Below the pieces are notes generated by a model that was not told where the DNA came from, did not search any database, and saw nothing but the letters and a program-made list of their open reading frames with translations. This document shows, piece after piece, positions 23,612 through 64,000 of a stretch of 64,000 nucleotides of DNA (the first letter of the stretch is position 1; each line of letters begins with the position of its first letter). This DNA is from Rebecca billardiae RCC1528 (taxonomy: Eukaryota > Protista > Haptophyta). A program made the position numbers and the translations under genes. The stretch is taken from contig OZ251246.1 of the NCBI GenBank assembly GCA_965240325.2, forward strand, positions 124,001-188,000. Direction: 5' to 3'.

Positions 23612-23800
23612 CTACTCGGGCTCGATGCGCGGCGTGCGGTGCAGCAGGAGCGGCAGCCCGAGCAGCGAGACGACGAGCGGCTCGAGCACGGCCAGCAGGC
23701 ACAGCAGGCTCAGCAGCCTGCGCGTGGCGGCGGCGAGTGCGCGCGCGGCGCTGGGCGGTCAGCGCGGCCGCGCGCGCGCGCGCGCGCGGCCGCTCGGCGC

Positions 23801-23839
<39 letters not shown>

Positions 23840-28455: not shown

Positions 28456-28492
<37 letters not shown>

Positions 28493-30911: not shown

Positions 30912-30942
<31 letters not shown>

Positions 30943-37990: not shown

Positions 37991-38025
<35 letters not shown>

Positions 38026-44000: not shown

Positions 44001-47000
44001 GGGCTCGGCGGTGGCCGCGGCGGAGGGCTCGGCGGCGCGCTCGGTGGCGGGCTTGGTGGCGGAGACGGCGGCGGGGCGGGCGCAGCCACTGGCGGCGGTG
44101 GGCTTGGCGGGGGACTCGGAGGCGGGCTCGGCGGTACAGACGGAGGCGGCGACGGTGGAGGTGCCGGCGGCGCGGCAGGTGGCGGCGACGGCGGCGGTGC
44201 TGGGGGGAGCGACGGTGGGGGCGACGGCGGCGGCGCAGGCGAGCCCATCGGTGGCGGCGGGCTCGGCGGTGGCGATGGCGGCTGCGACGGTGGTGGCGAA
44301 GGCGGAGGGGCAGGCGGCGGGGACGGAGGTGGCTTGGGTCCCGGCGGCGGGGACGGTGGCGGGGTGGGCGGTGGGCTGGGCGGCGGAGCCGGGATTGGTG
44401 GTGGCGATGGCGGCGGCGCGGGCGGTGGCGACGGCGGCGGCTGCGGCGGTGGCGAAGGGGGCGGCAGCAGAGGCAGCGGTGGCGGCGATGGAGGCGGCGA
44501 TGGCGGTGGGGATGGTGGTGGCGACGGCGGTGGCAGAGGTGGCGGGGCTGGTGGCGGCGCCGGAGGCGGCGGACTCGGCGGTGGCGCCGGAGGCGGCGGC
44601 GACGGTGGCGGTAGCGGTGGCGGTGGCAGCGGAGGCCCAATCACCACTGTCGAGAGCAGCGGCGTGAACGTGTACAGGAAGTCGGCGTAGAACTGCGCGG
44701 ACGAGCCGAGGAACGGGAACTTGCGGTCGTCAGCGCCGTTGCCCAGCGCGTCCGTCGTCTCGATCATCACAGCAACGCCCAACGACCCGCTGAGCGCCTG
44801 CGGCCACCCGCCGCTCGGGTACACGCCCACGCTGAACACGCCATTGGCGTACTCACCGCGCCCCACCCAGTAGCCTTCGGTCGACGTGCCGTTGTCCGTG
44901 CCGTTCACGTACACTGGCGTGTATGACGCAGTGGCCGCGCCGATCTCGAAGAAGACGCTCGTCTGGCTGTCGTCGGCGACGGTGTTGTCGTCCTTTGTCA
45001 CGACGACGGACACCACGAGCGGGTCGCTCGTGCCGACGCCAACGGCCCCCGACGTGATGCTGTAGCTCGTCAGGAAGCGGTACTTGCCCGCGACTGTGCG
45101 CAGCAGGTACTGCGCATCCTGCGCGCCCGTGCTGTTGTCCAGCGTCGGGTCGAGCGCGGATGCGCACGTCGTCAGCCCGGACACGCCGACGATGTACTGC
45201 GAGAGCACGCGCACGTCGAATGAGGTCAGGGCGCAGTCACCGTTCACATCGCCGGCAACGCCAGCCGAGCAGCCCGAGCACTCCGCCAGCCGCCGCACGC
45301 GCGCCGCCCGGCTCGACTCGGTCGGCACAAACAGGGGCGGCACGTACTCAGCGGCCAGCGCGAGCGCGCGCCGCCGGCTGACGGTCGTCGTGAGGCCGCC
45401 TGCGCCCGCGAAGAGTTCGGCGTTCTGCACGCGCGTCTCGGTCGCGCCCTGCACGGTCACGAGCTCGACGATGCTTCCCGTCAGCGACGTGCTCGCCGAG
45501 GACAGCACGTCGAATGTGACGGAGCCGATCGAGGCGGCAGTGCCGCTGGTGATCTGCGATGCCGTGTTGCCCACAAACCTGACCTCGTTCAGCGGATCGT
45601 TGATCGTGCACTCGGCCCACGAGAGCGTGCTGCACGACGTCGCGACCAGGACAGCGCTGTCGATGGCCAGCTCGATCTGGAAGTTGACCAGGTACTCCGA
45701 GCCGCCACCCGTGTTCACGCGCACGGGCACCGTCAGCGAGTTGCCAGACTGCTGGAACTGCAGTCCGCTCGCTGAGCCGAGGTCCACGTCGTACGTGCCA
45801 GGCTGCAGGTTCGCCGTCACGTCGAGGGCGTCGGCCACCGCGCCGGCATCGCGCGACGTCGCGGTGATCGAGTTCGCCGCGTCACGGCTGTTGCCGGCGA
45901 TCGTCACCACGCCGTTCGGGTCGACGCCGAGCACGGCCGCGTCGTCGCTCTCAAAGCTGAGCACCTCTGACACGCTCACGTACCCCAGCGACATCAGGTT
46001 GGTGTACTGCACGCTGTCCTCGAGCGTGACGAGCGCGCTCAGCGTGCTCGACGTGCCGTTGGTGGCCAGCAGCGACGCGCCGGACGTCAAGCCGCCCAGG
46101 CCCAGCGTCAGCGCCGTCACCTTCACCGCCGTCGCGTCGACGTAGACGGTGGCTGACGCTGTGAGCGTGCCCCACGTCGCGTTGATGAGCGCAACGCCCG
46201 CGCCCACGCCGATGACAGTGCTGCCCGACGTGGTCGCGACGAGCGTGTTGTTCGACGCCAGCACCACCTCTGCGGCCAGCAGCGTGGGCGAGATCACCGT
46301 GCCGTCGCTTAGCGCGGCCGATGGCGTCGTGGCCGTGCGCTGGAACGTGGTGGACGCGCCGATCAGCCCGAGCGTGTCGTCGTCGAGCGTGATCTCGAAT
46401 GACGCGCCAGCAGCCGTCACGACCGGCACCTCGACGAAGCCATTCAGGAGGTACGAGTCGACGAAGACGGTCACGTTGAGCGCAGTGCACGTTGCACCGC
46501 TCGCCATCGTCACCTCGTTCACGCCGTCGAATGTGGCGCACGACGACGGCACCGAGAGCGTGATGTTGGTGCGCGGGTCGGTGGTGAAGTCCACCTGCGA
46601 CTCGTCTTCAAACGTGACCGTGATCGTGACGGTGAGCGACGTGGGCAGCGACGTCGGCGGCTCGGCAGCAGGGTCGCCCGGCACGGTCACCTTGGCGGCC
46701 GATGTGCTCACGCCCACGCTCACCGCGTTCGGCAACTCTAGATCCACGCGCGCGCGGCCCGTCGCGAGCACGGCGCTGCACGAATCGATCCAGCTCGCGT
46801 CGAGGAGCAGGCCCTCCTGCGACGTGGCAAACGTTGCCACGGTAGCCGTCCACGGCGACGATGCGTCGCCCGGCGCACCGACGGTGAGACTCGACGTGCG
46901 GCTCGTCAGCGTGACCTCAGTCGACGGCACGAGCTCGTACGAGCCGTCGCCGAGGTACGCGTACGTGTACACGCTCACCGTCTGCCCTTCGGCCGTGAGC

Positions 47001-50000
47001 GTCTGCCCGAGAGCAGCCGACGCGTCGAAGCCGCTCGTCGCGCCCACACTCAGCGTCGACGGCGGCGAGTCGACGAACGCGATCGAATTGAACGCCACGG
47101 GCCGGAGCGATGCGACAAGGCGCTCCACGTCCGTCGACACCACGATCGTCGACGAGATCGACGGGCTCGAGCCGGATGCGCTGATCGCAGCCGAGCCGAC
47201 GCCCACGCCCGTCACCGTCACCACGCCGGTCGTGCCGGACGTGGAGATGCTCGCGACGCCGGCGTCGCCCGAGGCGAGCGTCGCCTCGCGCGTCACGTCC
47301 ACGTTGCTCACCGTGCTCAGACCCGTGCCGCCAAACGACGCGACGAGGCTGGCCGTCGTCGACTGGAACGCCTGCGTGCCGCACTGGCCGGGCTGCGACG
47401 CGCCCTTGATGGCGAAGAGCGTACCGTACCCGAAGCGGATCTCTGCGGACAGCGGGTGCCACACGCGCAGCGGCACGCTCGCGACCACCGCGCCGCTCGA
47501 GACGCGCGTCACGTTCACGAGAGTCGTCGCGGCGCCCGACGTGCTCGAGCTGCTCGCCACCACCGTGCACGGCGACCCTGAGCTGATGCCGAGCACGCTC
47601 GAGTCGAGCGCGAGGCACGAGTAGCCGCTCGACTGAGTGGCAGACGCAGTGGCGGCGCGGCTGTACAGCTCGAGCACGCTGAGCGCGGTGGTCACGTCGG
47701 TGCCGGAGAGCGGCGCGGTGTTGACTAGCTCGCCCGAGGCGACGTATGCGAGCCAGCCCTGCACCGCCACGGTCTCGACCACGAGCGTGCCGCTCGCTGA
47801 CGCGCCGTCGTCCGCGTCGGCAACCACGCCCGCCTGCTCGCTCACGTACACCTGCGTCGCGTCGTTCACGTACTGCTCGATCTCGACCGAGATGGCGCCG
47901 GCGTAGCTGCCAGCGGAGGCACCACCGGCCACGCTCATCGTCAGCGTGATCAGCTCCACGGCCGTACCGGTCACCTGCGCGTTGGTCGTGCCACCGGTGA
48001 GCCCCGTCGCGATGATCGACACGAGGCCGGCCGCGTTGTCGTTCACCTCCGGTGAGTTGTACGTGCTCGCGACCGACGTGCTGGCGACGCTGAGCACGCT
48101 CGAGTTGTACGCAATGTTGATCTGCCAGGTGATCAGCGCGACGCCACCCGTGTGCGCGTACAACACCAGCTCGAAGCTGTCGCCCGCGAACACGGGCGAC
48201 TGCGCCATCTGGCCCAGCAGGCCGACCGATGGGAGTGTGTACGCGGTCGGGCTCTCGGCGAGCGTGATCGCGCCCGCACGAGAGCACGAGTCGACTGTGC
48301 CGCCGCCGTAGTTGAAGTCGACGAGCACGTCGACGCTGCCCGCTGCGGCCGTGCTGAACCAGCCCGAGCTCACGGTGGCCGAGCACTCGCCCACGCCCGT
48401 CGTCGCGCTCGGCGAGCCGCACGAGAAGCTCTGGTCGGAGCCGCCCACCAGCGACAGCGTCAGGCTCACGCTCAGACCCGTGGTGAGCACGGACGAGCGG
48501 TGCGCCGCATCGCGAAGCTGGTACGCGACGCGCACGCCCGCGCGGTCCGCGTACGCCGTCGGCGTGCGCACCGCGCAGTCCACGCTCGCCGCCTGCTCGG
48601 CGGTCACGCTGTAGCTGCTCGCCACGCCGAGATCGATGCCGTGCGACGCGGCGCGCACCGTGCCGGACGCGCCCACAGACGCGCCCGCCAAGAAGCCCAC
48701 CGTCAAGTTGTGCCGGTTGCCGGCGCTGCTGACCGTGCCGTGCACAGCCGCGCCCGGGCTGCTGCTCGTCGTGTACAGCGTGATCTGCGCGTCTGAGACC
48801 AGCGCGTCCGCGCCGAACACGAACGGCGGAAGCGGCGGCGACGGCGGCGACGGCGGCGGGAATGGCAGCGTGCGCGGCGGTGGCGGGCTTGGTGGCGCCG
48901 GCGGCGGGAACGGCGGCGGCGGGCTAGGCGGCGGCGCAGGTGGTGGGCTAGGCGGCGGCGTCGGCGGCGGATGCGGCTGTGGCGGAGGCGGGGACGGCGG
49001 CGGCGAGGGCGGCGGGGACGGCGGAGGGCTCGGTGGCGGTTTTGGCCCGGGCACTGGTGGTGGCGGGCTCGGCGGCGGACTGGGAGGTGGGCTCGGTGGC
49101 GGGAAGGGCGGAGGTTGGGGGAATGGCGGCGGCGGCGAAGGCGGCGGCACAGGCGGCGGGCTGGGAGGCGCTTGCGGCGGGGGGCTAGGTGGCGGGCTGG
49201 GCGGCGGGCTGGGCGGCTGTGAAGGAGGCGGGGGCGACGGAGGCGGCAATGGCGGGGAATGTGGGGGCGGGCTCGGTGGCGGCCCCGGTGGCGGGGATGG
49301 CGGCGGCAACGGCACCGCGACGGGCGGCGGCGGGCTGGGCGGCGGGATTGGTGGCAGCACTGGAGGCGGCGACGGCGGCGGCGCGGGTGGTGGCGCAGGA
49401 GGCGCCGAGGGTGGCGGCAGAGGCGGGGGCGACGGTGGTGGAAGAGGAGTGGCAGCCGGCGGTGGGCTCGGGGGCGGCGTCGGTGGTAGCAATGGCGGTG
49501 GGGACGGCGGTGGCGACGGCGGCGGAGATGGCGGAGGCAAGGGCGGAGGGAGCGGCGGGGGTGAAGGCGGCAGTGACGGGGGCGGCAGCGGGGGCGGTGA
49601 TGGCGGCGGCGACGGCGGTGACGGCGGCGGAAATGGCTCCGAGCGAGGCGGTGGCGGCGGCTGTGGCGGTGGACTCGGCGGTGGGGAGGGCGGCGGGCTT
49701 GGCGGCGGAGACGGTGGCGGTGACGGAGGCGGCGGACTTGGTGGCGGACTTGGCGGCGGGCTCGGTGGCGGGCTAGGGGGAGGGGATGGCGGTGGCGACG
49801 GTGGTGGCACAGGCAGAGCAGCAGGCGGAGGCGGGCTCGGTGGCGGGCTCGGCGGCGGGCTCGGGGGCGCGCTCGGCGGTGGCGACGGTGGCGGTGCCGG
49901 AGGCGTCGCAGGCGGAGGGGACGGTGGCGGTGCTGGCGGCGGCGATGGCGGCGGCCGCGGCGTCACCACCGGTGGTGGCGGGCTTGGCGGCGGCGACGGT

Positions 50001-53000
50001 GGCGGCGACGGAGGGGCGGCCGGCGGAGGCGAAGGCGGCGGGGACGGCGGCGGCGACGGCGGAGGCACGGGTGGCGGAGGCGAGGGCGGTGGGCTCGGCG
50101 GAGGAGACGGCGGCGGGCTTGGCGGCGGTGCCGGGGGCGACGGTGGCGGGAACGGCTCCGTGCGCGGCGGCGGCGGCAGAGCAGGCGGCGGGCTAGGCGG
50201 CGGAGATGGCGGCGGAGACGGCGGCGGTGACGGAGGCGGCGTCGGAGGCGGAGGGCTCGGCGGCGGACGCGGCGGTGGGCTCGGCGGCGGGCTGGGAGGC
50301 GGCAACGGCGGTGGCGACGGTGGCGGCGCTGGCACAGCAGCCGGCGGTGGCGGGCTCGGTGGCGGGCTGGGCGGCGGGCTGGGCGGTGGCGAAGGTGGCG
50401 GTGCCGGAGGCGCCGCAGGCGGGGGCGACGGAGGCGGTGCCGGCGGCGGCGATGGCGGCGGCCGCGGCGTCACCACCGGTGGTGGCGGGCTTGGCGGCGG
50501 AGACGGTGGCGGTGCCGGAGGGGCGGCCGGCGGAGGCGAAGGCGGCGGGAACGGCGGCGGCGACGGCGGTGGCACGGGCGGCGGAGGCGAAGGCGGTGGG
50601 CTCGGTGGAGGAGACGGTGGCGGGCTTGGCGGCGGTGCCGGAGGTGACGGTGGCGGGAACGGCTCCGTGCGCGGCGGCGGTGGCGGCGCAGGCGGCGGGC
50701 TCGGTGGCGGAGACGGAGGCGGGCTCGGTGGCGGAGACGGCGGCGGAGTCGGAGGCGGAGGGCTCGGCGGCGGACGCGGCGGTGGGCTCGGCGGAGGGCT
50801 GGGCGGCGGCAAAGGTGGTGGCGACGGTGGTGGCGCAGGCACAGCAGCCGGCGGTGGCGGGCTCGGTGGCGGGCTGGGTGGCGGGCTGGGCGGCGCACTC
50901 GGCGGTGGTGACGGTGGCGGCAAGGGCGGTGCCCCAGGTGGCGGCGAAGGTGGAGGCGCCGGCGAAGGCGAAGGAGGCGGCAACGGCGTCTCCAGCGGTG
51001 GCGGCGGGCTCGGCGGTGGGGACGGCGGCGGGGAAGGCGGCGGCGAGGGCGGCGGTGACGGCGGCAGACTCGGCGGTGGCGAAGGCGGCGGCACGGGAGG
51101 CGGAGGCGACGGCGGCGGAGACGGCGGCGGCGATGGTGGCGGGCTTGGCGGCGGTGCCGGCGGCGACGGCGGCGGGAACGGCTCCGTGCGCGGCGGCGGT
51201 GGCGGCGCAGGCGGCGGGCTCGGTGGCGGAGACGGAGGCGGGCTCGGTGGCGGAGACGGCGGCGGAGTCGGAGGCGGAGGGCTCGGCGGCGGACGCGGCG
51301 GTGGGCTCGGCGGCGGGCTGGGAGGCGGCAACGGCGGTGGCGACGGTGGCGGCGCTGGCACAGCAGCCGGCGGTGGCGGGCTCGGTGGCGGGCTGGGCGG
51401 CGGGCTGGGCGGTGGCGAAGGTGGCGGTGCCGGAGGCGCCGCAGGCGGGGGCGACGGGGGCGGTGCCGGCGGCGGCGATGGCGGCGGCCGCGGCGTCACC
51501 ACCGGTGGTGGCGGGCTTGGCGGCGGAGACGGTGGCGGCGACGGAGGGGCGGCCGGCGGAGGCGAAGGCGGCGGGAACGGCGGCGGCGAAGGCGGTGGCA
51601 CGGGCGGCGGAGGCGAGGGCGGTGGGCTCGGCGGAGGAGACGGCGGCGGGATTGGCGGAGGTGCCGGAGGCGACGGTGGCGGGAAGGGCTCCGTGCGCGG
51701 CGGAGGCGGCGGCGCAGGCGGCGGGCTTGGCGGCGGCGACGGTGCCGGAGACGGCGGCGGAGAGGGCGGCGGCGTCGGAGGCGGAGGGCTCGGCGGCGGA
51801 CGCGGCGGCGGGCTTGGCGGTGGAGACGGCGGCGCCGACGGCGGCGGCGACGGCGGCGGTGTAGGCACAGCAGCCGGCGGTGGCGGGCTCGGTGGCGGGC
51901 TGGGAGGCGGGCTCGGTGGCGGTCTGGGCGGCGGTGACGGTGGCGGCGCGGGCGGCACCCCAGGCGGCGGCGAAGGTGGCGGCGACGGCGGAGGCGACGG
52001 AGGCGGCAACGGCGTCTCCAGCGGTGGTGGCGGGCTCGGCGGTGGGGACGGCGGCGGGGAAGGCGGCGGCGAGGGCGGCGGTGACGGCGGCAGACTCGGC
52101 GGTGGCGAAGGTGGCGGCACGGGAGGCGGAGGCGACGGCGGCGGAGACGGCGGCGGCGATGGTGGCGGGCTTGGCGGCGGTGCCGGCGGCGACGGCGGCG
52201 GGAACGGCTCCGTGCGCGGCGGCGGCGGCGGTGCGGGCGGCGGGCTAGGCGGCGGAGATGGCGGCGGAGACGGCGGCGGAGATGGCGGCGGCGTCGGAGG
52301 CGGAGGGCTCGGCGGCGGACGCGGCGGTGGGCTCGGCGGCGGGCTGGGAGGCGGCAACGGCGGTGGCGACGGTGGCGGCGCTGGCACAGCAGCCGGCGGT
52401 GGCGGGCTCGGTGGCGGGCTCGGTGGCGGGCTCGGCGGTGGCGAAGGGGGCGGCGCCGGAGGCGCCGCAGGCGGGGGCGACGGAGGCGGTGCCGGCGGCG
52501 GCGATGGCGGCGGCCGCGGCGTCACCACCGGTGGTGGCGGGCTTGGCGGCGGAGACGGTGGCGGCGACGGAGGGGCGGCCGGCGGAGGCGAAGGCGGCGG
52601 GAACGGCGGAGGCGAAGGCGGTGGCACGGGCGGCGGAGGCGAGGGCGGTGGGCTCGGTGGAGGAGACGGTGGCGGGCTTGGCGGCGGTGCCGGAGGTGAC
52701 GGTGGCGGGAAGGGCTCCGTGCGCGGCGGAGGTGGCGGCGCAGGCGGCGGGCTCGGTGGCGGAGACGGAGGCGGGCTCGGTGGCGGAGACGGCGGCGGAG
52801 TCGGAGGCGGAGGGCTCGGCGGCGGACGCGGCGGTGGGCTCGGCGGAGGGCTGGGCGGCGGCAAAGGTGGTGGCGACGGTGGTGGCGCAGGCACAGCAGC
52901 CGGCGGTGGCGGGCTCGGTGGCGGGCTGGGTGGCGGGCTGGGCGGCGCACTCGGCGGTGGTGACGGTGGCGGCAAGGGCGGTGCCCCAGGTGGCGGCGAA

Positions 53001-56000
53001 GGTGGAGGCGCCGGCGGAGGCGAAGGAGGCGGCAACGGCGTCTCCAGCGGTGGCGGCGGGCTCGGAGGCGGCGAGGGCGGCGGGGATGGCGGCGGCGAGG
53101 GCGGCGCTAACGGCGGCGGGCTCGGCGGTGGCGACGGTGGCGGCACCGGCGGCGGAGGCGACGGCGGCGGAGACGGCGGCGGCGATGGCGGAGGCGACGG
53201 TGGCGGGGCCGGCGGCGACGGTGGCGGGAACGGCTCCGTGCGCGGCGGCGGCGGCGGTGCGGGCGGCGGGCTAGGCGGCGGAGATGGCGGCGGAGACGGC
53301 GGCGGAGACGGCGGCGGCGTCGGAGGCGGAGGGCTCGGCGGCGGACGCGGCGGTGGGCTCGGCGGCGGGCTGGGAGGCGGCAACGGCGGTGGCGACGGTG
53401 GCGGCGCTGGCACAGCAGCCGGCGGTGGCGGGCTCGGTGGCGGGCTGGGCGGCGGGCTGGGCGGTGGCGAAGGTGGCGGTGCCGGAGGCGTCGCAGGCGG
53501 GGGCGACGGAGGCGGTGCCGGCGGCGGCGATGGCGGCGGCCGCGGCGTCACCACCGGTGGTGGCGGGCTTGGCGGCGGAGACGGTGGCGGCGACGGAGGG
53601 GCGGCCGGCGGAGGCGAAGGCGGCGGGAACGGCGGCGGCAAAGGCGGTGGCACGGGCGGCGGCGGCGACGGCGGTGGGCTCGGTGGAGGAGACGGTGGCG
53701 GGCTTGGCGGCGGTGCCGGAGGCGACGGTGGCGGGAAGGGCTCCGTGCGCGGCGGCGGTGGCGGCGCAGGCGGCGGGCTCGGTGGCGGAGACGGAGGCGG
53801 GCTCGGTGGCGGAGACGGCGGCGGAGTCGGAGGCGGAGGGCTCGGCGGCGGACGCGGCGGTGGGCTCGGCGGAGGGCTGGGCGGCGGCAAAGGTGGTGGC
53901 GACGGTGGTGGCGCAGGCACAGCAGCCGGCGGTGGCGGGCTCGGTGGCGGGCTGGGTGGCGGGCTGGGCGGCGCACTCGGCGGTGGTGACGGTGGCGGCA
54001 AGGGCGGTGCCCCAGGTGGCGGCGAAGGTGGAGGCGCCGGCGGAGGCGAAGGAGGCGGCAACGGCGTCTCCAGCGGTGGCGGCGGGCTCGGCGGTGGGGA
54101 CGGCGGCGGGGAAGGCGGCGGCGAGGGCGGCGGTGACGGCGGCAGACTCGGCGGTGGCGAAGGTGGCGGCACCGGCGGCGGAGGCGACGGCGGCGGAGAC
54201 GGCGGCGGCGATGGCGGAGGCGACGGTGGCGGGGCCGGCGGCGACGGTGGCGGGAACGGCTCCGTGCGCGGCGGCGGAGGCGGTGCGGGCGGCGGGCTAG
54301 GCGGCGGAGACGGAGGCGGGCTCGGTGGCGGAGACGGCGGCGGAGTCGGAGGCGGAGGGCTCGGCGGCGGACGCGGCGGTGGGCTCGGCGGAGGGCTGGG
54401 CGGCGGCAAAGGTGGTGGCGACGGCGGCGGTGTAGGCACAGCAGCCGGCGGTGGCGGGCTCGGTGGCGGGCTGGGTGGCGGGCTGGGCGGCGCACTCGGC
54501 GGTGGGGACGGTGGCGGCAATGGCGGTGCCCCAGGTGGCGGCGAAGGTGGAGGCGCCGGCGGAGGCGAAGGAGGCGGCAACGGCGTCTCCAGCGGTGGCG
54601 GCGGGCTCGGCGGTGGGGACGGCGGCGGGGAAGGCGGCGGCGAGGGCGGCGGTGACGGCGGCAGACTCGGCGGTGGCGAAGGTGGCGGCACGGGAGGCGG
54701 AGGCGACGGCGGCGGAGACGGCGGCGGCGATGGTGGCGGGCTTGGCGGCGGTGCCGGCGGCGACGGCGGCGGGAACGGCTCCGTGCGCGGCGGCGGCGGC
54801 GGTGCGGGCGGCGAGCTAGGCGGCGGAGATGGCGGCGGAGACGGCGGCGGAGACGGCGGCAACGTCGGAGGCGGAGGGCTCGGCGGCGGACGCGGCGGTG
54901 GGCTTGGCGGTGGAGACGGCGGCGCCGACGGCGGCGGCGACGGCGGCGGCGTAGGCACAGCAGCCGGCGGCGGCGGGCTCGGTGGCGGGCTGGGAGGCGG
55001 GCTCGGTGGCGGGCTGGGCGGCGGTGACGGTGGCGGCGCGGGCGGCACCCCAGGCGGCGGCGAAGGTGGCGGCGACGGCGGAGGCGACGGAGGCGGCAAC
55101 GGCGTCTCCAGCGGTGGTGGCGGGCTCGGCGGTGGGGACGGCGGCGGGGAAGGCGGCGGCGAGGGCGGCGGTGACGGCGGCAGACTCGGCGGTGGCGAAG
55201 GTGGCGGCACGGGAGGCGGAGGCGACGGCGGCGGAGACGGCGGCGGCGATGGTGGCGGGCTTGGCGGCGGTGCCGGCGGCGACGGCGGCGGGAACGGCTC
55301 CGTGCGCGGCGGCGGCGGCGGTGCGGGCGGCGGGCTAGGCGGCGGAGATGGCGGCGGAGACGGCGGCGGAGACGGCGGCGGCGTCGGAGGCGGAGGGCTC
55401 GGCGGCGGACGCGGCGGTGGGCTCGGCGGCGGGCTGGGAGGCGGCAACGGCGGTGGCGACGGTGGCGGCGCTGGCACAGCAGCCGGCGGTGGCGGGCTCG
55501 GTGGCGGGCTCGGTGGCGCACTCGGCGGTGGCGAAGGTGGCGGTGCCGGAGGCGCCGCAGGCGGGGGCGACGGAGGCGGTGCCGGCGGCGGCGATGGCGG
55601 CGGCCGCGGCGTCGCCACCGGTGGTGGCGGGCTTGGCGGCGGAGACGGTGGCGGCGACGGAGGGGCGGCCGGCGGAGGCGAAGGCGGCGGGATCGGCGGC
55701 GGCGAAGGCGGTGGCACGGGCGGCGGAGGCGAGGGCGGCGGGCTCGGCGGAGGAGACGGCGGCGGGCTTGGCGGCGGTGCCGGCGGCGACGGCGGCGGAA
55801 GCGGATCCGTGCGCGGCGGAGGCGGCGGCGCAGGCGGCGGGCTTGGCGGCGGCGACGGTGCCGGAGACGGCGGCGGAGAGGGCGGCGGCGTCGGAGGCGG
55901 AGGGCTCGGCGGCGGACGCGGCGGCGGGCTTGGCGGCGGTGACGGCGGCGTCGACGGCGGCGGCGACGGCGGCGGCGTAGGCACAGCAGCCGGCGGTGGC

Positions 56001-59000
56001 GGGCTCGGTGGCGGGCTGGGTGGCGGGCTGGGTGGCGGGCTGGGCGGCGGGCTCGGTGGCAGGCTGGGCGGAGGGCTCGGCGGTGGCGACGGTAGCGGCG
56101 CGGGCGGCGCCGCAGGCGGAGGCGACGGCGGAGGCGAAGGCGGCGGCGACGGAGGCGGCAACGGCGTCTCCAGCGGTGGTGGCGGGCTCGGCGGAGGCGA
56201 CGGCGGCGGCGATGGCGGCGGCACAGGCGGCTGCGAGGGCGGCGGCGAAGGCGGTGGCGACGGTGGCGACAACGGCGGCGGTGGCGACGGTGGTGGCGAC
56301 GGCGGCGGCGAAGGCGGCGGGCTAGGTGGCGGCGCCGGCGGCGACGGAGGCGGGAACGGATCCGTGCGCGGCGGCGGCGGCGGCGCAGGTGGCGGGCTCG
56401 GCGGGGGCGAAGGCAGCGGGGACGGTGGCGGAGACGGTGGCGGAGCCGGAGGCGGCGGACTCGGCGGCGGAGACGGCGGCGGAGATGGCGGAGGGCTCGG
56501 CGGAGCCGACGGCGGCGGTGACGGCGGCGGCGCAGGCACAGCGACTGGCGGCGGCGGACTCGGTGGCGGGCTGGGTGGCGGGCTGGGCGGCGCACTCGGC
56601 GGCGGCGACGGTGGCGGCGCGGGCGGTGCCCCAGGCGGCGGCGAAGGCGGCGGTGCTGGTGGCGGTGACGGTGGTGGCAATGGCGTCGCAACCGGTGGCG
56701 GCGGGCTCGGCGGCGGCGATGGAGGCGGCGAGGGCGGTGGCGAGGGCGGTGGCGAAGGCGGGGCGCGTGGCGGCGGAGATGGCGGCGGCACCGGCGGCGG
56801 AGGAGAAGGCGGCGGCGACGGCGGTGGAGATGGCGGTGGGCTTGGCGGCGGCGACGGAGGCGACGGCGGCGGGAACGGCTCTGCACGTGGCGGTGGCGGC
56901 GGCTGCGGAGGCGGGCTAGGCGGCGGCGACGGCGGCGGGCTGGGCGGAGGAGACGGCGGCGGCGCTGGTGGTGGCGGGCTCGGCGGTGGCCGCGGCGGAG
57001 GGCTCGGTGGCACGCTCGGTGGCGGGCTTGGTGGCGGAGACGGCGGCGGGGCCGGTGCAGCCACTGGCGGCGGTGGGCTTGGCGGGGGACTCGGAGGCGG
57101 GCTCGGCGGTATAGACGGAGGCGGCGACGGTGGAGGTGCCGGCGGCGCCGCAGGTGGCGGCGACGGCGGCGGTGCTGGGGGAAGCGACGGTGGGGGCGAC
57201 GGCGGCGGCGCAGGCGAGCCCACCGGTGGCGGCGGGCTCGGCGGTGGCGATGGCGGCTGCGACGGTGGTGGCGAAGGCGGAGGGGCAGGCGGCGGGGACG
57301 GAGGCGGCGTGGGTCCCGGCGGCGGGGACGGTGGCGGGGTGGGCGGTGGGCTGGGCGGCGGAGCCGGGGCAGGGGGAGGCGATGGCGGCGGCGATGGCGG
57401 CGGCAGTGGCGGTGGCTGCGGCGGTGGCGAAGGGGGCGGCAGCGGAGGCAGCGGTGGCGGCGATGGAGGCGGCGATGGCGGTGGGGATGGTGGCGGCGAC
57501 GGCGGTGGCACAGGTGGCGGGGCGGGCGGCGCCGCCGGAGGCGGCGGACTCGGCGGTGGCGCCGGAGGCGGCGGCGACGGTGGCGGTAGCGGTGGCGGTG
57601 GCAGCGGAGGCCCAATCACCACTGTCGAGAGCAGCGGCGTGAACGTGTACAGGAAGTCGGCGTAGAACTGCGCGGAGGAGCCGAGGAACGGGAACTTGCG
57701 GTCGTCCGCGCCGTTGCCCAGCGCGTCCGTCGTCTCGATCATCACAGCAACGCCCAACGACCCGCTGAGCGCCTGCGGCCACCCGCCGCTCGGGTACACG
57801 CCCACGCTGAACACGCCGTTGGCGTACTCGCCGCGCCCCACCCAGTAGCCTTCGGTCGACGTGCCGTTGTCCGTGCCGTTCACGTACACTGGCGTGTATG
57901 ACGCAGTGGCCGCGCCGATCTCGAAGAAGACGCTCGTCTGGCTGTCGTCGGCGACGGTGTTGTCGTCCTTCGTCACGACGACGGACACCACGAGCGGGTC
58001 GCTCGTGCCGACGCCAACGGCCCCCGACGTGATGCTGTAGCTCGTCAGGAAGCGGTACTTGCCCGCGACTGCGCGCAGCAGGTACTGCACATCCTGCGCG
58101 CCCGTGCTGTTGTCCAGCGTCGGGTCGAGCGCGGACGCGCACGTCGTCAGCCCGGACACGCCGATGACGAACTGCGAGAGCACGCGCACGTCGAATGAGG
58201 TCAGGGCGCAGTCACCGTTCACATCGCCGGCGACGCCAGCCGAGCAGCCCGAGCACTCCGCCAGCCGCCGCGCGCGCGCCGCCCGGCTCGACTCGGTCGG
58301 CACAAACAGGGGCGGCACGTACTCAGCGGCCAGCGCGAGCGCGCGCCGCCGGCTGACGGTCGTCGTGAGGCCGCCTGCGCCCGCGAAGATGTCGGCGTTC
58401 TGCACGCGCGTCTCGGTCGCGCCCTGCACGGTCACGAGCTCGACGATGCTTCCCGTCAGCGACGTGCTCGCCGAGGACAGCACGTCGAATGTGACGGAGC
58501 CGATCGAGGCGGCAGTGCCGCTGGTGATCTGCGATGCCGTGTTGCCCACAAACCTGACCTCGTTCAGCGGATCGTTGATCGTGCACTCGGCCCACGAGAG
58601 CGTGCTGCACGACGTCGCGACCAGGACAGCGCTGTCGATGGCCAGCTCGATCTGGAAGTTGACCAGGTACTCCGAGCCGCCACCCGTGTTCACGCGCACG
58701 GGCACCGTCAGCGAGTTGCCAGACTGCTGGAACTGCAGTCCGCTCGCTGAGCCGAGGTCCACGTCGTACGTGCCAGGCTGCAGGTTCGCCGTCACGTCGA
58801 GGGCGTCGGCCACCGCGCCGGCATCGCGCGACGTCGCGGTGATCGAGTTCGCCGCGTCACGGCTGTTGCCGGCGATCGTCACCACGCCGTTCGGGTCGAC
58901 GCCGAGCACGGCCGCGTCGTCGCTCTCAAAGCTGAGCACCTCTGACACGCTCACGTACCCCAGCGACATCAGGTTGGTGTACTGCACGCCGTCCTCGAGC

Positions 59001-62000
59001 GTGACGAGCGCGCTCAGCGTGCTCGACGTGCCGTTGGTGGCCAGCAGCGACGCGCCGGACGTCAAGCCGCCCAGGCCCAGCGTCAGCGCCGTCACCTTCA
59101 CCGCCGTCGCGTCGACGTAGACGGTGGCTGACGCTGTGAGCGTGCCCCACGTCGCGTTGATGAGCGCAACGCCCGCGCCCAGGCCGATGACAGTGCTGCC
59201 CGACGTGGTCGCGACGAGCGTGTTGTTCGACGCCAGCACCACCTCTGCGGCCAGCAGCGTGGGCGAGATCACCGTGCCGTCGCTTAGCGTGGCCGATGGC
59301 GTCGTGGCCGTGCGCTGGAACGTGGTGGACGCGCCGATCAGCCCGAGCGTGTCGTCGTCGAGCGTGATCTCGAATGACGCGCCAGCAGCCGTCACGACCG
59401 GCACCTCGACGAAGCCACTGAGGAGGTACGAGTCGACGAAGACGGTCACGTTGAGCGCAGTGCACGTTGCACCGCTCGCCATCGTCACCTCGTTCACGCC
59501 GTCGAATGTGGCGCACGACGACGGCACCGAGAGCGTGATGTTGGTGCGCGGGTCGGTGGTGAAGTCCACCTGCGACTCGTCTTCAAACGTGACCGTGATC
59601 GTGACGGTGAGCGACGTGGGCAGCGACGTCGGCGGCTCGGCAGCAGGGTCGCCCGGCACGGTCACCTTGGCGGCCGATGTGCTCACGCCCACGCTCACCG
59701 CGTTCGGCAACTCTAGATCCACGCGCGCGCGGCCCGTCGCGAGCACGGCGCTGCACGAATCGATCCAGCTCGCGTCGAGGAGCAGGCCCTCCTGCGACGT
59801 GGCAAACGTTGCCACGGTAGCCGTCCACGGCGACGATGCGTCGCCCGGCGCACCGACGGTGAGACTCGACGTGCGGCTCGTCAGCGTGACCTCAGTCGAC
59901 GGCACGAGCTCGTACGAGCCGTCGCCGAGGTACGCGTACGTGTACACGCTCACCGTCTGCCCTTCGGCCGTGAGCGTCTGCCCGAGAGCAGCCGACGCGT
60001 CGAAGCCGCTCGTCGCGCCCACACTCAGCGTCGACGGCGGCGAGTCGATGAACGCGATCGAGTTGAACGCCACGGGCCGGAGCGATGCGATGAGGCGCTC
60101 CACGTCCGTCGACACCACGATCGTCGACGAGATCGACGGGCTCGAGCCAGATGCGCTGATCGCAGCCGAGCCAACGCCAACGCCCGTCACCATCACCACG
60201 CCGGTCGTGCCGGACGTGGAGATGCTCGCGACGCCGGCGTCGCCCGAGGCGAGCGTCGCGTCGCGCGTCACGTCCACGTTGCTCACCGTGCTCAGACCCG
60301 TGCCGCCAAACGACGCGACGAGGCTGGCCGTCGTCGACTGGAACGCCTGCGTGCCGCACTGGCCGGGCTGCGACGCGCCCTTGATGGCGAAGAGCGTACC
60401 GTACCCGAAGCGGATCTCTGCGGACAGCGGGTGCCACACGCACAGCGGCACGCTCGCGACCACCGCGCCGCTCGAGACGCGCGTCACGTTCACAAGAGTC
60501 GTCGCGGCGCCCGACGTGCTCGAGCTGCTCGCCACCACCGTGCACGGCGACCCTGAGCTGATGCCGAGCACGCTCGAGTCGAGCGCGAGGCACGAGTAGC
60601 CGCTCGACTGAGTGGCAGACGCAGTGGCGGCGCGGCTGTACAGCTCGAGCACGCTGAGCGCGGTGGTCACGTCGGTGCCGGAGAGCGGCGCGGTGTTGAC
60701 CAGCTCGCCCGAGGCGACGTATGCGAGCCAGCCCTGCACCACCACGGTCTCGACCACGAGCGTGCCGCTCGCTGACGCGCCGTCGTCCGCGTCGGCGACC
60801 ACGCCCGCCTGCTCGCTCACGTACACCTGCGTCGCGTCGTTCACGTACTGCTCGATCTCGACCGAGATGGCGCCGGCGTAGCTGCCAGCGGAGGCACCAC
60901 CGGCCACGCTCATCGCCAGCGTGATCAGCTCCACGGCCGTACCGGTCACCTGCGCGTTGGTCGTGCCACCGGTGAGCCCCGTCGCGATGATCGACACGAG
61001 GCCGGCCGCGTTGTCGTTCACCTCCGGTGAGTTGTACGTGCTCGCGACCGACGTGCTGGCGACGCTGAGCACGCTCGAGTTGTACGCAATGTTGATCTGC
61101 CAGGTGATCAGCGCGACGCCACCCGTGTGCGCATACATCACCAGGTCAAAGCTGTCGCCCGCGAACACGGGCGACTGCGCCATCTGGCCCAGCAGGCCGA
61201 CCGATGGGAGTGTGTACGCGGTCGGGCTCTCGGCGAGCGTGATCGCGCCCGCACGAGAGCACGAGTCGACTGTGCCGCCGCCGTAGTTGAAGTCGACGAG
61301 CACGTCGACGCTGCCCGCTGCGGCCGTGCTGAACCAGCCCGAGCTCACGGTGGCCGAGCACTCGCCCACGCCCGTCGTCGCGCTCGGCGAGCCGCACGAG
61401 AAGCTCTGGTCGGAGCCGCCCACCAGCGACAGCGTCAGGCTCACGCTCAGACCCGTGGTGAGCACGGACGAGCGGTGCGCCGCATCGCGAAGCTGGTACG
61501 CGACGCGCACGCCCGTGCGGTCTGCGTACGCCGTCGGCGTGCGCACCGCGCAGTCCACGCTCGCCGCCTGCTCGGCGGTCACGCTGTAGCTGCTCGCCAC
61601 GCCGAGATCGATGCCGTGCGACGCGGCGCGCACCGTGCCGGACGCGCCCACAGACGCCCCCGCCAAGAAGCCCACCGTCAAGTTGTGCCGGTTGCCGGCG
61701 CTGCTGACCGTGCCGTGCACAGCCGCGCCCGGGCTGCTGCTCGTCGTGTACAGCGTGATCTGAGCGTCCGAGACCAGCGCGTCCGCGCCGAACACGAACG
61801 GCGGAAGCGGCGGCGACGGCGGCGACGGCGGCGGGAATGGCAGCGTGCGCGGCGGCGGCGGGCTTGGCGGCGACGGCGGCGGGAACGGCGGCGGCGGGCT
61901 AGGCGGCGGCGATGGCGGTGGGCTCGGCGGCGGCAAGGGCGGCGAGCGCGGCTGCGGGGGCGGCGGAGACGGCGGCGGCGAAGGTGGAGGCGACGGCGGA

Positions 62001-64000
62001 GGGCTCGGTGGCGGTTTTGGCCCGGGCACTGGTGGTGGCGGGCTGGGCGGCGGGCTGGGCGGCGGGCTGGGCGGAGGCGATGGCGGTGGTCGCGGGAGAG
62101 GTGGAGGTGGCGAAGGTGGCGGCTCCGGCGGGGGACTAGGAGGCAACGCGGGTGGAGGGCTGGGCGGTGGTGACGGCGGCGGAGACGGCGGCGGCGTCGG
62201 AGGCGGCGGGCTCGGCGGCGGCGACGGCGGCGGGGACGGCGGCGGGCTCGGCGGTGGAACCGGCGGCGGCGACGGCGGCGGTGTAGGCACAGCAGCCGGC
62301 GGCGGCGGGCTCGGTGGTGGACTGGGAGGCGGGCTCGGAGGCGGGCTGGGCGGCGGCGACGGTGGCGGCGACGGCGGAAGCGCAGGCGGCGGCGAAGGTG
62401 GCGGCGACGGCGGAGGCGACGGAGGCGGCAACGGCGTCTCCAGCGGTGGCGGAGGGCTCGGCGGGGGCGACGGCGGCGGCGATGGCGGCGGCACAGGCGG
62501 CGGCGAGGGCGGCGGGCTCGGCGGAGGCGACGGTGGCGGCAACGGCGGCGGAGGCGATGGCGGCGGCGACGGCGGAGGCGAGGGCGGCGGGCTAGGTGGC
62601 GGCGCCGGAGGTGACGGAGGCGGGAGCGGATCCGTGCGCGGCGGCGGCGGCGGCTGTGGTGGCGGGCTCGGCGGCGGAGATGGCGGTGGGGACGGAGGCG
62701 GGGACGGTGGCGGCGTCGGAGGCGGCGGGCTCGGCGGTGGACGCGGTGGCGGTGAAGGCGGCGGGCTCGGCGGTGGCGACGGCGGCGGCGACGGCGGCGG
62801 TGTGGGCACAGCAGCCGGCGGCGGCGGGCTCGGCGGTGGGCTTGGCGGCGGACTTGGTGGCGGGCTGGGCGGCGGCGACGGTGGCGGCGCGGGCGGCGCC
62901 CCAGGCGTTGGCGAAGGTGGCGGCGACGGCGGAGGCGACGGAGGCGGCAACGGCGTCTCCAGCGGTGGCGGAGGGCTCGGCGGGGGCGACGGCGGCGGCG
63001 ATGGCGGCGGCAAAGGCGGCGGCGAGGGCGGCGGGCTCGGCGGAGGCGACGGTGGCGGCAGTGGCGGCGGCGGCGACGGCGGCGGCGACGGCGGAGGGGA
63101 AGGCGGCGGGCTAGGTGGCGGTGCCGGCGGCGACGGAGGCGGGAACGGATCCGTGCGCGGCGGCGGCGGCGGCTGTGGTGGCGGGCTCGGCGGCGGAGAC
63201 GGCGGCGGGGACGGAGGCGGGGACGGTGGCGGCGCCGGAGGCGGCGGACTCGGCGGTGGACGCGGTGGCGGTGAAGGCGGCGGGCTCGGCGGTGGCGACG
63301 GCGGCGGCGACGGCGGCGGTGTTGGCACAGCAGCCGGCGGCGGCGGGCTCGGCGGTGGGCTTGGCGGCGGGCTTGGTGGCGGGCTGGGCGGCGGCGACGG
63401 TGGCGGCGCGGGCGGCGCCTCAGGCGGCGGCGAAGGTGGCGGCGACGGCGGAGGCGACGGAGGCGGCAACGGCGTCTCCAGCGGTGGCGGAGGGCTCGGC
63501 GGGGGCGAAGGCGGCGGCGATGGCGGCAGCAAAGGCGGCGGCGAGGGCGGCGGGCTCGGCGGCGGAGACGGTGGCGGCACCGGCGGCGGCGGTGACGGCG
63601 GCGGCGACGGCGGAGGCGAAGGCGGCGGCGAAGGCGGCGGCGCCGGCGGCGACGGAGGCGGGAACGGATCCGTGCGAGGCGGCGGCGGCGGCTGTGGTGG
63701 CGGGCTCGGCGGCGGAGATGGCGGCGGGGACGGCGGCGGGGACGGTGGCGGCGTTGGAGGCGGCGGGCTCGGCGGCGGACGCGGTGGCGGTGAAGGCGGC
63801 GGGCTCGGCGGTGGCGACGGCGGCGGCGACGGCGGCGGTGTAGGCACAGCAGCCGGCGGCGGCGGGCTCGGTGGTGGGCTGGGCGGCGGGCTTGGTGGCG
63901 GGCTGGGCGGCGGCGACGGTGGCGGCGCGGGCGGCGCCTCAGGCGGCGGCGAAGGTGGCGGCGACGGCGGAGGCGACGGAGGCGGCAACGGCGTCTCAAG
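23612..64000 (-). CDS. Giant (>13,400 aa) membrane-anchored surface protein: SPPP rods, three TMEM132-like/cohesin/dockerin modules, SdrD-B-like domain, polycystin-1-like 5-TM C-terminus; 5' end beyond the window
   Basis: Uninterrupted 40-kb ORF, open to position 64000. A terminal GT-AG intron at 23846-23718 gives CASW|LLSLLCLLAVLEPLVVSLLGLPLLLHRTPRIEPE-TAG (23614-23612). A second in-frame 105-nt intron at 24427-24323 is likely. Hydrophobic helices at ~28765-28840, ~28250-28305, ~28075-28160, ~23915-23965 and ~23645-23717. Confidence 0.88.
33465..37990 (-). other. Globular module 3 (membrane-proximal, diverged) of the giant protein
   Basis: Same motif order as modules 1 and 2 (YADRADV..YQLRD, ECS..V.PSWF, YAHTGG, VPLRVWYP, DVDLG, LVNFQIE, CTINDP, YGDVSGDCAFTSFD, LDPTLDG, FPFLGSSA) but clearly divergent in sequence. 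Confidence 0.85.
39451..41850. repeat. Five tandem 480-bp coding repeats (160-aa Pro-rich unit)
   Basis: Anchor gctccgtgcgcggcggagg recurs at 39451, 39931, 40411, 40891, 41371 and 41851. Confidence 0.92.
44636..48823 (-). repeat. Globular module 2 of the giant protein (near-identical copy of module 1)
   Basis: Matches 57611-61798 at offset 12,975, with about 22 amino-acid differences counted by eye over ~1,396 aa. Confidence 0.95.
50155..56880. repeat. Higher-order coding array of 507/519-bp units (1,026-bp dimer period)
   Basis: The RTEPF anchor recurs near 50155, 50662, 51181, 51688, 52207, 52714, 53233, 53740, 54259, 54778, 55297 and 55804. Confidence 0.85.
57611..61798 (-). repeat. Globular module 1 of the giant protein
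   Basis: FVFGADALVSDAQ...FTPLLSTVVIGP, duplicated at 44636-48823. Confidence 0.95.

What the first reader, a model, noticed from the sequence alone, without database searches (positions are those of the whole stretch)
58250..58360. Conserved basic RRR/RRL linker placed exactly between the second cohesin and the dockerin in all three modules
Seen: modules 1 and 2 have TVSRRRALALA...SSRAAR(A/V)RRLAEC (also ~45275-45385); module 3 has SAARRALAD...AARAARRLQSC (~34140-34320). The linker length differs but both basic sites are kept. Established: RxRR/RR sites are proprotein-convertase targets, and RXL-type processing sites are known from secreted diatom wall proteins. Inference: cleavage would excise a small propeptide and release subunits that begin with a dockerin and end with a cohesin, suited to head-to-tail non-covalent re-polymerisation, branching or controlled shedding.
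Basis: partly seen in the sequence, partly recalled or inferred. Interest (0 to 1): 0.8.

Follow-up and report, generated by a model that had tools for sequence, protein, structure and literature searches.

The report
Basic cut-site linker, cohesin to dockerin
In a giant algal surface protein, the loop joining a cohesin to its dockerin carries two arginine-rich motifs that relatives from other algae and from cadherin-type proteins keep in the same places, so it is probably cut by a secretory protease, though no cutting has been shown.

Summary
All three modules of the minus-strand ORF (over 13,400 codons, 23759-64000, open at its 5' end) have a linker between cohesin 2 and the dockerin. It starts with RR(R)AL and ends with RRL two or three residues before the first dockerin cysteine.

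Modules 1 and 2 are 98% identical, so the window holds only two independent copies. The real support comes from 147 non-redundant homologous cassettes outside the window (Diacronema, Prymnesium, Pavlovales, Cymbomonas, Mesostigma, unnamed contigs). 122 have a dibasic site at the first position, 115 at the second and 96 at both. Shuffled linkers give 10±3 with both. Linker interiors and lengths are not conserved.

The motif differs by lineage. Algal cassettes prefer RR(x)L or RxL. Cadherin-containing cassettes use furin-type [RK]x[RK]R.

AlphaFold2 models are confident everywhere except the linker. pTM stays at 0.89 for cohesin 2, linker and dockerin alone, which implies that the two domains dock in cis.

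Most likely the linker is an excised connecting peptide that leaves a calcium-held, non-covalent joint. Release followed by re-polymerisation fits less well. Cleavage is unproven, and no RNA runs or proteomic data were available.

Earlier notes of this scan describe the same cassette on other DNA of this genome.

The parts
23759..64000 (-). Giant ORF (over 13,400 codons, open at the window's end). It holds (SPPP)n rods, three globular modules of about 1,400 aa, and a tail with hydrophobic TM-like segments.
58352..58786 (-). Module 1, cohesin 2 (aa 1735-1879)
   Evidence: AF2 beta jelly-roll with pLDDT of about 95. The top 24 VIA-align matches are all cohesins, Z 11.3-13.2. Pfam Cohesin matches 17 of 62 homologues.
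58256..58351 (-). Module 1 linker (aa 1880-1911), the finding itself
   Evidence: It is the only low-pLDDT stretch (block means 69, 54, 58) in the 445-aa model.
58337..58351 (-). Module 1, site 1: RRRAL (aa 1880-1884)
   Evidence: The homologous position carries a dibasic pair in 80% of cassettes.
58259..58276 (-). Module 1, site 2: RARRLA (aa 1905-1910), followed by E and then C1912
   Evidence: R227 of the alignment is conserved in at least 90% of sequences. RRLA is the S1P site of LCMV GPC.
58055..58255 (-). Module 1 dockerin (aa 1912-1978), with two Ca-loop and helix repeats and four Cys
   Evidence: All six PDB profile hits are dockerins (E 0.15-1.3). G241, D253 and D286 are invariant and D242 and D246 are at least 90% conserved. 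Pfam Dockerin_1 matches 16 of 62 homologues.
57614..58054 (-). Module 1, C-terminal beta-sandwich after the dockerin
   Evidence: AF2 strands at residues 300-443 with pLDDT of about 95
45281..45376 (-). Module 2 linker: RRRAL at 45362-45376 and RVRRLA at 45284-45301
   Evidence: It lies 12,975 bp from the module 1 copy, and this part of module 2 is 98% identical to module 1 in protein.
45080..45280 (-). Module 2 dockerin
   Evidence: Pfam Dockerin_1, E = 0.006, below the family cut-off
34139..34315 (-). Module 3 linker (aa 9892-9950): RRALA at 34301-34315, an A/R/G-rich interior encoded by (CG)n-like simple DNA, and RRLQ at 34142-34153
33920..34138 (-). Module 3 dockerin (aa 9951-10023)
34316..34750 (-). 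Module 3, cohesin 2 (aa 9747-9891)

Best explanation
The linker is a connecting peptide flanked by two endoprotease recognition sites. Cohesin 2 and the dockerin fold and dock on each other in cis while they are still one chain. A secretory-pathway protease then cuts at both sites, RR(R)-A-L and R-x-R-R-L-x. It would be a subtilase of the kexin/furin or S1P type, or the still unidentified enzyme that cuts diatom RXL sites. The cuts remove about 25-60 unconserved residues.

The result is a chain nicked once per module. Its pieces run dockerin, beta-sandwich, polyproline rod, TMEM132-like block, cohesin. They are held together only by calcium-dependent cohesin-dockerin contacts. Such joints could act as breakable or exchangeable links in a micrometre-long cell-surface fibre.

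Shown: the motifs, their position, their conservation, the disorder of the linker, and the cohesin and dockerin identities. Inferred: cis docking (from pTM only), cleavage, the protease class, and the mechanical role.
For: 1. Position-specific conservation without sequence conservation between the sites. Dibasic frequency is about 0-3% per 5-column bin along most of the 445-position profile. It is 80% at positions 200-204 and 40% and 48% at 220-229. The alignment-free shuffle tests agree: both sites are present in 96 of 147 cassettes against 10±3.
2. An independent MAFFT alignment also gives a consensus of RRRxL ... RRxL-x5-C, with R227 at least 90% conserved.
3. The sites persist in relatives whose linkers are not A/R-rich (Prymnesium, P0001-P0003). 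They also persist across haptophytes, Cymbomonas, Mesostigma and cadherin-containing proteins.
4. The motif differs by lineage at fixed positions. In 121 algal-type cassettes RxL occurs at 89 (site 1) and 90 (site 2), and L is the commonest residue after the RR. In 26 cassettes from cadherin-motif proteins, 26 and 25 are dibasic, 14 and 21 are [RK]x[RK]R, the next residue is S/E/D or Q/N/A, and L is almost absent. A structural role would not predict this switch. Co-evolution with each lineage's processing enzyme would.
5. The linker is the only low-confidence stretch in two AF2 models (pLDDT 92.8 with pTM 0.90; pLDDT 92.3 with pTM 0.89). pTM stays high when only cohesin 2, linker and dockerin are modelled.
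6. There are precedents. Plant type-1 pectin methylesterases carry two basic tetrads (RRLL/RKLL) about 20-35 residues apart between the PRO region and the enzyme, and a subtilisin-like protease removes the PRO region in the Golgi (PMC4008260). S1P sites include RRLA and RRLL (PMC12987983). Diatom RXL pro-regions end in RRL (PMC5525289).
Against: - There is no direct evidence of cleavage. No RNA run was listed and no proteomic data were available.
- The protease was not identified in this genome. Only a weak PCSK7-like EST hit in Emiliania is on record.
- Cis docking rests on pTM alone, because coordinates and PAE were not available.
- About a quarter to a third of cassettes fail one of my site rules, and 7 of 147 have no dibasic pair at all.
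- Folded parts of the cassettes show no depletion of dibasic pairs overall: 164 observed against 143 expected.
- In this genome the linker DNA is (CG)n-like, and that alone makes Ala- and Arg-rich peptides.
Confidence: 0.5

Rival explanations
1. The linker is not cut. It is a flexible tether that keeps cohesin 2 and the dockerin close. The conserved arginines act as an electrostatic latch on these acidic domains, or as a binding site for acidic wall or scale polysaccharides.
For: The flanking domains are acidic: net charge is -16 for Ig plus cohesin 2 and -3 for the dockerin, against +4 for the linker. No cleavage evidence exists. AF2 places short low-confidence helices in the linker at residues 200-209 and 220-226.
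Against: A latch or polyanion site needs charge, not a precise RR followed by L. It also does not predict the switch from RR(x)L to [RK]x[RK]R followed by S/D/E/Q between lineages. The conserved residues sit in the lowest-confidence part of the model, which is typical of a short linear motif rather than a packed contact.
Confidence: 0.25
2. One reading: cleavage frees subunits that begin with a dockerin and end with a cohesin. These then assemble in trans, head to tail or branched, or are shed.
For: The domain order does give such subunits. Each module has a second cohesin (cohesin 1, in the TMEM132-like block) with no partner of its own in the chain. Cohesin-dockerin pairs can exchange partners.
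Against: AF2 keeps pTM at 0.89 for the neighbouring cohesin 2 and dockerin alone. The partner is therefore already bound before any cut, and trans assembly would first need dissociation of a pair that is normally tight. Nothing here tests trans binding.
Confidence: 0.15
3. The arginines are a by-product of composition. In a genome with 70-85% GC, slippage of (CG)n or (GCG)n in an unconstrained linker yields Ala/Arg runs, so RR appears by chance.
For: Module 3's linker DNA is scored as a CG/CGCGCCGCGCG tandem repeat. The interior is A/R/G-rich and differs in length between modules and from Diacronema.
Against: This explains the interior but not the sites. Shuffling each linker's own residues gives both sites in 10±3 of 147 cassettes against 96 observed. 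Relatives with linkers that are not A/R-rich keep the sites.
Confidence: 0.03
4. The linker is an in-frame intron and is absent from the mature protein.
For: This is a eukaryotic gene, the linker length is variable, and no RNA data were available.
Against: Protein-level motifs are conserved at both ends inside the stretch across distant taxa. Deposited gene models of Prymnesium and Diacronema keep it. I saw no GT...AG pair of plausible length when reading the module 1 linker.
Confidence: 0.02

Closest known systems
Plant type-1 pectin methylesterase PRO-region processing (two basic tetrads, RRLL/RKLL, cut by a subtilisin-like protease, S1P/SBT6.1 type)
   Same: Two RR-L-type motifs lie about 20-35 residues apart in the linker between two domains of one secreted wall protein. 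The upstream part is removed in the Golgi (PMC4008260).
   Different: In the plant case the PRO domain is discarded and has no cohesin or dockerin. Here both sides are retained domains predicted to bind each other. Cleavage is shown in plants and not here.
Diatom RXL pro-regions (silaffins, cingulins, Silicanin-1)
   Same: The tripeptide is the same (RRL in Sin1). It occurs in secreted algal wall proteins and is removed by an unknown protease (PMC5525289).
   Different: The diatom RXL sits about 30 residues after the signal peptide, at the N-terminus. Here there are two internal sites per module, repeated along a giant chain, in a different algal phylum.
Proprotein-convertase or S1P-nicked proteins that stay non-covalently assembled (Notch S1, proinsulin C-peptide excision, arenavirus GPC RRLA/RRLL)
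   Same: Basic sites flank or split a precursor whose halves stay together after the cut. RRLA at site 2 of modules 1 and 2 equals the LCMV S1P site. Notch is cut by furin in the Golgi (PMC2770060).
   Different: The domains and the organisms differ. That these cut proteins stay assembled is my own background knowledge, except where a paper is cited.
Bacterial cellulosome cohesin-dockerin pairs
   Same: Cohesin fold (Z 11.3-13.2). Dockerin Ca-loop pattern D-x-N-x-D...D occurs twice.
   Different: Bacterial partners normally sit on different proteins and are not linked by a cleavable loop. Here they are adjacent in one eukaryotic chain.
Animal TMEM132 proteins and the coherin, lefftyrin and hedgling cadherins of choanoflagellates and sponges
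   Same: The upstream half of each module matches TMEM132 Ig domains (Pfam Ig_TMEM132_4th, 1e-9). Cadherin-containing relatives carry the same cohesin, dibasic linker and dockerin cassette.
   Different: The TMEM132 paper reports no detectable dockerin in vertebrates (PMC6030884). The algal proteins have no cadherin repeats and add (SPPP)n rods.

Membership tests
Cohesin module (PF00963) | Nine-stranded beta jelly-roll superimposable on solved cohesins | tested here: met
   The top 24 VIA-align hits are all cohesins: Z 11.3-13.2, rmsd 2.5-4.0 Å, 121-132 residues aligned. Foldseek gives TM up to 0.67 on the target.
Cohesin module (PF00963) | Sequence match to the Pfam profile above its cut-off | tested here: inconclusive
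   The window's cohesin 2 gives no Pfam hit. 17 of 62 aligned homologues match, with a best E-value of 7e-9.
Type I dockerin (PF00404) | Two EF-hand-like Ca loops (D-x-N/D/T-x-D ... D at position 12), each followed by a helix | tested here: met
   The loops read GDVNGDCALTSFD and DPTLDNSTGAQD. G241, D253 and D286 are invariant and D242 and D246 are at least 90% conserved in 62 sequences. Helices lie at 251-261 and 284-294.
Type I dockerin (PF00404) | Sequence match to the profile or to solved dockerins | tested here: inconclusive
   Module 2 scores E = 0.006, below the cut-off. All six PDB profile hits are dockerins, but with E of 0.15-1.3. 16 of 62 homologues match Pfam, with a best E-value of 1.4e-7.
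Cohesin-dockerin complex | The dockerin binds the cohesin, dependent on Ca2+ | not testable with these tools
   There is only an indirect hint: pTM is 0.89 for cohesin 2, linker and dockerin alone. No coordinates or PAE were available.
Furin/kexin-type convertase site | R-x-[KR]-R (furin) or a KR/RR pair in an exposed loop | tested here: inconclusive
   Site 2 of modules 1 and 2 is RARR or RVRR, which meets the motif. Module 3 has AARR and site 1 has SRRR, which are dibasic only. The loop has low pLDDT. Among homologues, [RK]x[RK]R occurs in 14 and 21 of 26 cadherin-type cassettes but in only 25 and 32 of 121 others.
S1P/SKI-1-type site | R-x-hydrophobic-x, as in RRLL and RRLA | tested here: met
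   Site 2 is RRLA (modules 1, 2) or RRLQ (module 3). Site 1 contains RALA in all three. RRLA and RRLL are shown to be S1P sites in PMC12987983. Only the motif is met; cleavage was not tested.
Any processing site | The bond is actually cut in vivo | not testable with these tools
   No RNA run was listed and no proteomic data were available.
Diatom RXL pro-region | RXL ends a short pro-region directly after the signal peptide | tested here: not met
   The tripeptide matches, but the sites here are internal, at aa 1880-1910, 6205-6235 and 9892-9949 of a chain of over 13,400 aa.

The most novel reading that the evidence does not exclude
An old and widespread eukaryotic device: a cohesin-dockerin pair made as one chain and then turned into a non-covalent, calcium-held joint by excision of a connecting peptide. 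The cut-site motif would have tracked each lineage's processing enzyme, RR(x)L or RxL in haptophyte and green algae and R-x-K/R-R in cadherin-type (probably holozoan) proteins. If so, the ancestors of the animal TMEM132 and coherin adhesion cassettes were processed heteromers with a built-in cohesin partner. Giant algal surface fibres would be chains of pre-cut, breakable or exchangeable links.
Probability: 0.35. Interest if true: 0.8.

Novelty: new variant of a known kind. Interest (0 to 1): 0.62.

Why it matters
Cohesin-dockerin pairs are best known as the bacterial glue of cellulosomes. Their role in eukaryotes is unknown, and the cohesin of human TMEM132 proteins (linked to hearing loss and panic disorder) has no known partner (PMC6030884).

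Here the partner sits next to the cohesin in the same chain. The two are separated by a loop whose only conserved features are two protease-type motifs, and these change form between lineages. That gives a concrete, testable model for how micrometre-long algal surface fibres are built and released. It also gives a lead on the still unidentified RXL protease of algae and a hypothesis for the ancestral state of an animal adhesion family.

A naturally nicked, calcium-dependent, very strong protein joint would also interest protein engineers.

Tried and rejected
- RNA evidence: the look-up of sequencing runs listed no run for module 1. Expression and splicing remain untested.
- Word-based protein search with the 445-aa piece alone found nothing, because the relatives are much longer. 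The module plus region query gave 5 hits and the full HMMER search gave 504.
- Pfam on the window's own modules does not reach the cut-off for Cohesin or Dockerin. Membership rests on fold, conserved residues and homologues.
- The PDB sequence search gave only weak dockerin hits.
- The composition by-product idea, (CG)n simple DNA, was tested by shuffling and rejected for the two sites.
- The in-frame intron idea was rejected on protein-level conservation.
- Depletion of dibasic pairs elsewhere in the cassette, as a sign of a protease-rich route, was not found: 164 observed against 143 expected.
- Peer et al. 2009 and Nichols et al. 2012 are not held. No held paper combines dockerin, cohesin and haptophyte.
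- Model coordinates and PAE are not exposed, so the cohesin-dockerin interface could not be inspected.
- P0019 was too long for the look-up of encoding contigs, so P0078 was used instead.
- The organism behind the cadherin-type contigs was not identified.
Full report
**What is at the coordinates.** The window is very GC-rich, from 61% to 88% in 2-kb windows. It carries one minus-strand reading frame from 23759 to the window's end, open at its 5' end. The frame is over 13,400 codons long.

The protein alternates proline rods of the (SPPP)n type with three globular modules of about 1,400 residues: aa 701-2110, 5031-6430 and 8641-10160. It ends in a tail with hydrophobic segments.

The finding's coordinates, 58250-58360, fall in module 1. 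There the chain reads TVS-RRRAL-ALAAEYVPPLFVPTESS-RARRLA-EC-SGC and then GDVNGDC. Module 2 is the same apart from RVRRLA. Module 3 has SAA-RRALA-D, a longer interior rich in A, R and G, then AA-RRLQ-SC-DPC and GDVSGDC.

**What the flanking domains are.** Pfam sees TMEM132 Ig domains in every module (1e-9). It gives only sub-threshold Cohesin and Dockerin hits.

An AF2 model of the last 445 residues of module 1, built on 62 aligned homologues, is very confident: mean pLDDT 92.8 and pTM 0.90. From N to C it contains:
- an Ig-like domain;
- a beta jelly-roll at residues 63-196;
- a stretch at 201-230 with block pLDDT of 69, 54 and 58;
- a small helical domain at 232-298;
- a beta-sandwich.

For the jelly-roll, the top 24 structural matches are all solved cohesins: Z 11.3-13.2, rmsd 2.5-4.0 Å, 121-132 residues aligned (Foldseek).

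The helical domain has two calcium-loop patterns, D-x-N-x-D...D and D-x-T-x-D...D. Their Gly and Asp positions are the most conserved columns of the alignment. All six PDB profile hits are dockerins, though weak. Among 62 homologous cassettes, 17 match Pfam Cohesin (best 7e-9) and 16 match Dockerin_1 (best 1.4e-7).

So "second cohesin, linker, dockerin" is a fair description. Site 1 begins right after the last cohesin strand. Site 2 ends three residues before the first ordered dockerin residue.

**Is the pattern more than chance?** Inside the window the case is thin. Modules 1 and 2 are 98% identical over this part, so there are two independent copies, not three.

In module 3 the linker DNA is a (CG)n-like simple repeat. 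Read in frame, that alone gives Ala and Arg.

Even so, module 1 has only 2.6% Arg, and its only RR pairs are the two sites. The four proline rods have no dibasic pair at all.

**Evidence from relatives.** A profile of the three copies found 504 proteins at E ≤ 0.001 and 88 at E ≤ 1e-30 among 1.84 billion representatives. Named members are listed here:
- Diacronema lutheri, the closest at 51% identity to module 3;
- Prymnesium parvum;
- Pavlovales sp. CCMP2436;
- the green algae Cymbomonas tetramitiformis and Mesostigma viride.

I extracted 154 cassettes that span the linker from 124 proteins. After removing near-duplicates and the window's own copies, 147 remained.

Along the 445 profile positions, the share of cassettes with a dibasic pair is about 0-3% per five-column bin in most bins. 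It is 80% at positions 200-204 and 40% and 48% at 220-229. Two further peaks, GK[YR]RF and DRKF, lie inside folded, high-confidence domains.

That alignment was fitted to a profile containing the motifs, so I repeated the test without it:
- The first dibasic pair lies 9-13 residues after the conserved Gly in 104 of 140 cassettes.
- Shuffling each linker's own residues gives site 1 in 36±5 cassettes (observed 122), site 2 in 45±5 (observed 115) and both in 10±3 (observed 96; maximum 19 in 500 shuffles).
- A separate MAFFT alignment also yields the consensus RRRxL ... RRxL-x5-C, with one Arg at least 90% conserved.

Linker length runs from 34 to 110 residues and the interior is not conserved. 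The composition by-product idea explains only the interior.

**What the motif is.** Aligned on the end of the basic run, site 1 reads [S/G]-x-(R)-R-R-[L]-[L]. Site 2 reads (R)-x-R-R-[L/Q]-[L/A/T]-x-C. Leu occupies one of the two positions after the run in 58% and 49% of sites, against 17% expected (p = 2e-25 and 8e-15). Several cassettes that lack a second RR still have a single R-x-L there.

The motif depends on lineage:

| Group | Cassettes | Dibasic (site 1 / site 2) | RxL (site 1 / site 2) | [RK]x[RK]R (site 1 / site 2) | Residue after the run |
|---|---|---|---|---|---|
| Proteins with repeated cadherin motifs (11 proteins) | 26 | 26 / 25 | 3 / 1 | 14 / 21 | S/E/D (site 1); Q/N/A (site 2) |
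| Other, algal-type (112 proteins) | 121 | 104 / 94 | 89 / 90 | 25 / 32 | L is commonest |

One protein of the cadherin group, P0078, has Pfam Cadherin plus TMEM132 domains on record.

I read the cadherin group as the coherin-type cadherins of choanoflagellates and sponges described in PMC6030884. This is an inference, because the contigs are unnamed.

In the window, site 2 of modules 1 and 2 fits both readings. RARR and RVRR are R-x-R-R. RRLA is identical to the S1P site of LCMV GPC. Module 3 (AARR-LQ) and site 1 (SRRR-AL, containing RALA) fit only the dibasic and R-x-L readings.

**How it most likely works.** Three points carry the argument:
- Fixed positions combined with lineage-specific motifs argue for protease recognition sites rather than structural contacts.
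- The conserved residues lie in the only low-confidence stretch of the model, as short linear motifs do.
- A model of cohesin 2, linker and dockerin alone (244 residues) keeps mean pLDDT at 92.3 and pTM at 0.89, with only residues 151-180 low. With 12% of the chain disordered, such a pTM needs the dockerin fixed against the cohesin.

I therefore infer cis docking, although I could not inspect coordinates or PAE.

The simplest mechanism is a connecting peptide, as in proinsulin. The two domains fold and dock as one chain, a secretory protease cuts at both sites, and the joint is then held only by the calcium-dependent cohesin-dockerin contact.

They would already be assembled, though. Release followed by re-polymerisation is possible but needs an extra dissociation step.

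The closest documented parallel is the plant type-1 pectin methylesterase. It has two basic tetrads (RRLL/RKLL) about 20-35 residues apart between the PRO region and the enzyme, and a subtilisin-like protease removes the PRO region in the Golgi. Diatom RXL pro-regions, which end in RRL in Sin1 and are removed by an unknown protease, are the nearest algal case.

**What is not shown.** Cleavage itself is not shown. No RNA run was listed, so I have neither expression nor splicing data, and no proteomic data were available. The protease is unidentified; a weak PCSK7-like EST hit in Emiliania is only a lead. About a quarter to a third of cassettes fail one of my site rules, and 7 of 147 have no dibasic pair. 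Dibasic pairs are not depleted in the folded parts.

**Novelty and earlier notes.** No held paper combines cohesin, dockerin and haptophytes. The TMEM132 paper states that no dockerin is detectable in vertebrates.

Earlier notes of this scan describe the same cassette and loop in other genes of this genome and just beyond this window. This is therefore a repeat sighting, not a first one.

I rate it a new variant of a known kind: a proteolytically nicked extracellular protein that stays assembled, here built from a eukaryotic cohesin-dockerin pair.

Noticed in passing
window 48899-57658, 38069-44698, 30719-33508, 61889-64000 (minus strand): The (SPPP)n rods have a regular super-repeat. The motif PPPPPR-T-(D/E)-P-F-PPP recurs 39 times, mostly every 160-173 residues in the long rods and every 55-98 residues in the last one. 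These single Arg residues are almost the only charged residues in the rods.
   Followed up: partly
window 44699-48898 versus 57659-61888: The aligned C-terminal 445 residues of modules 1 and 2 are 98% identical in protein, and the two copies lie exactly 12,975 bp apart. This points to a recent tandem duplication of module plus rod. Within the linker the only amino-acid change is A to V next to site 2.
   Followed up: partly
window 34147-34319: Module 3's linker interior is encoded by (CG)n / CGCGCCGCGCG-like simple DNA. This explains its Ala/Arg/Gly-rich composition and variable length. The Diacronema counterpart has a different interior of similar composition.
   Followed up: yes
window 28100-28828 (minus strand), and 23759-28000: The tail has three strong hydrophobic segments (aa 11721-11739, 11896-11914, 11945-11963), consistent with a membrane anchor. 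Downstream, the frame runs on through low-complexity sequence (GQ, DA, EA and RA repeats) to the stop at 23759. It may not all be coding.
   Followed up: partly
window 30560-30690 (minus strand, aa ~11117-11160): Just after the last rod there is a DGYLEGC...DADGDGALD motif. The Diacronema relative has a similar AYDGYLAGC at the same place. It has no Pfam match.
   Followed up: no
profile positions 295-299 and 415-419 (module 1: aa ~1975-1979 and ~2095-2099): Two further positions carry dibasic pairs in about 35% of relatives (GK[YR]RF at the dockerin's end and DRKFPF). Both lie in high-confidence folded parts, so they are probably structural rather than cut sites.
   Followed up: partly
L001 (ENA ERZ26694059, contig of 535 kb): The cadherin-type relative P0078 lies between two more giant genes with Cadherin and TMEM132 domains (6,312 and 1,362 residues called). 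This looks like a tandem cluster of such genes in an unnamed eukaryote.
   Followed up: no
window 30000-64000, plus strand: The ORF list holds many long plus-strand ORFs, for example 48636-57665 at 3,009 aa. They overlap the giant minus-strand gene. They are best read as stop-free artefacts of the GC-rich repeats.
   Followed up: no
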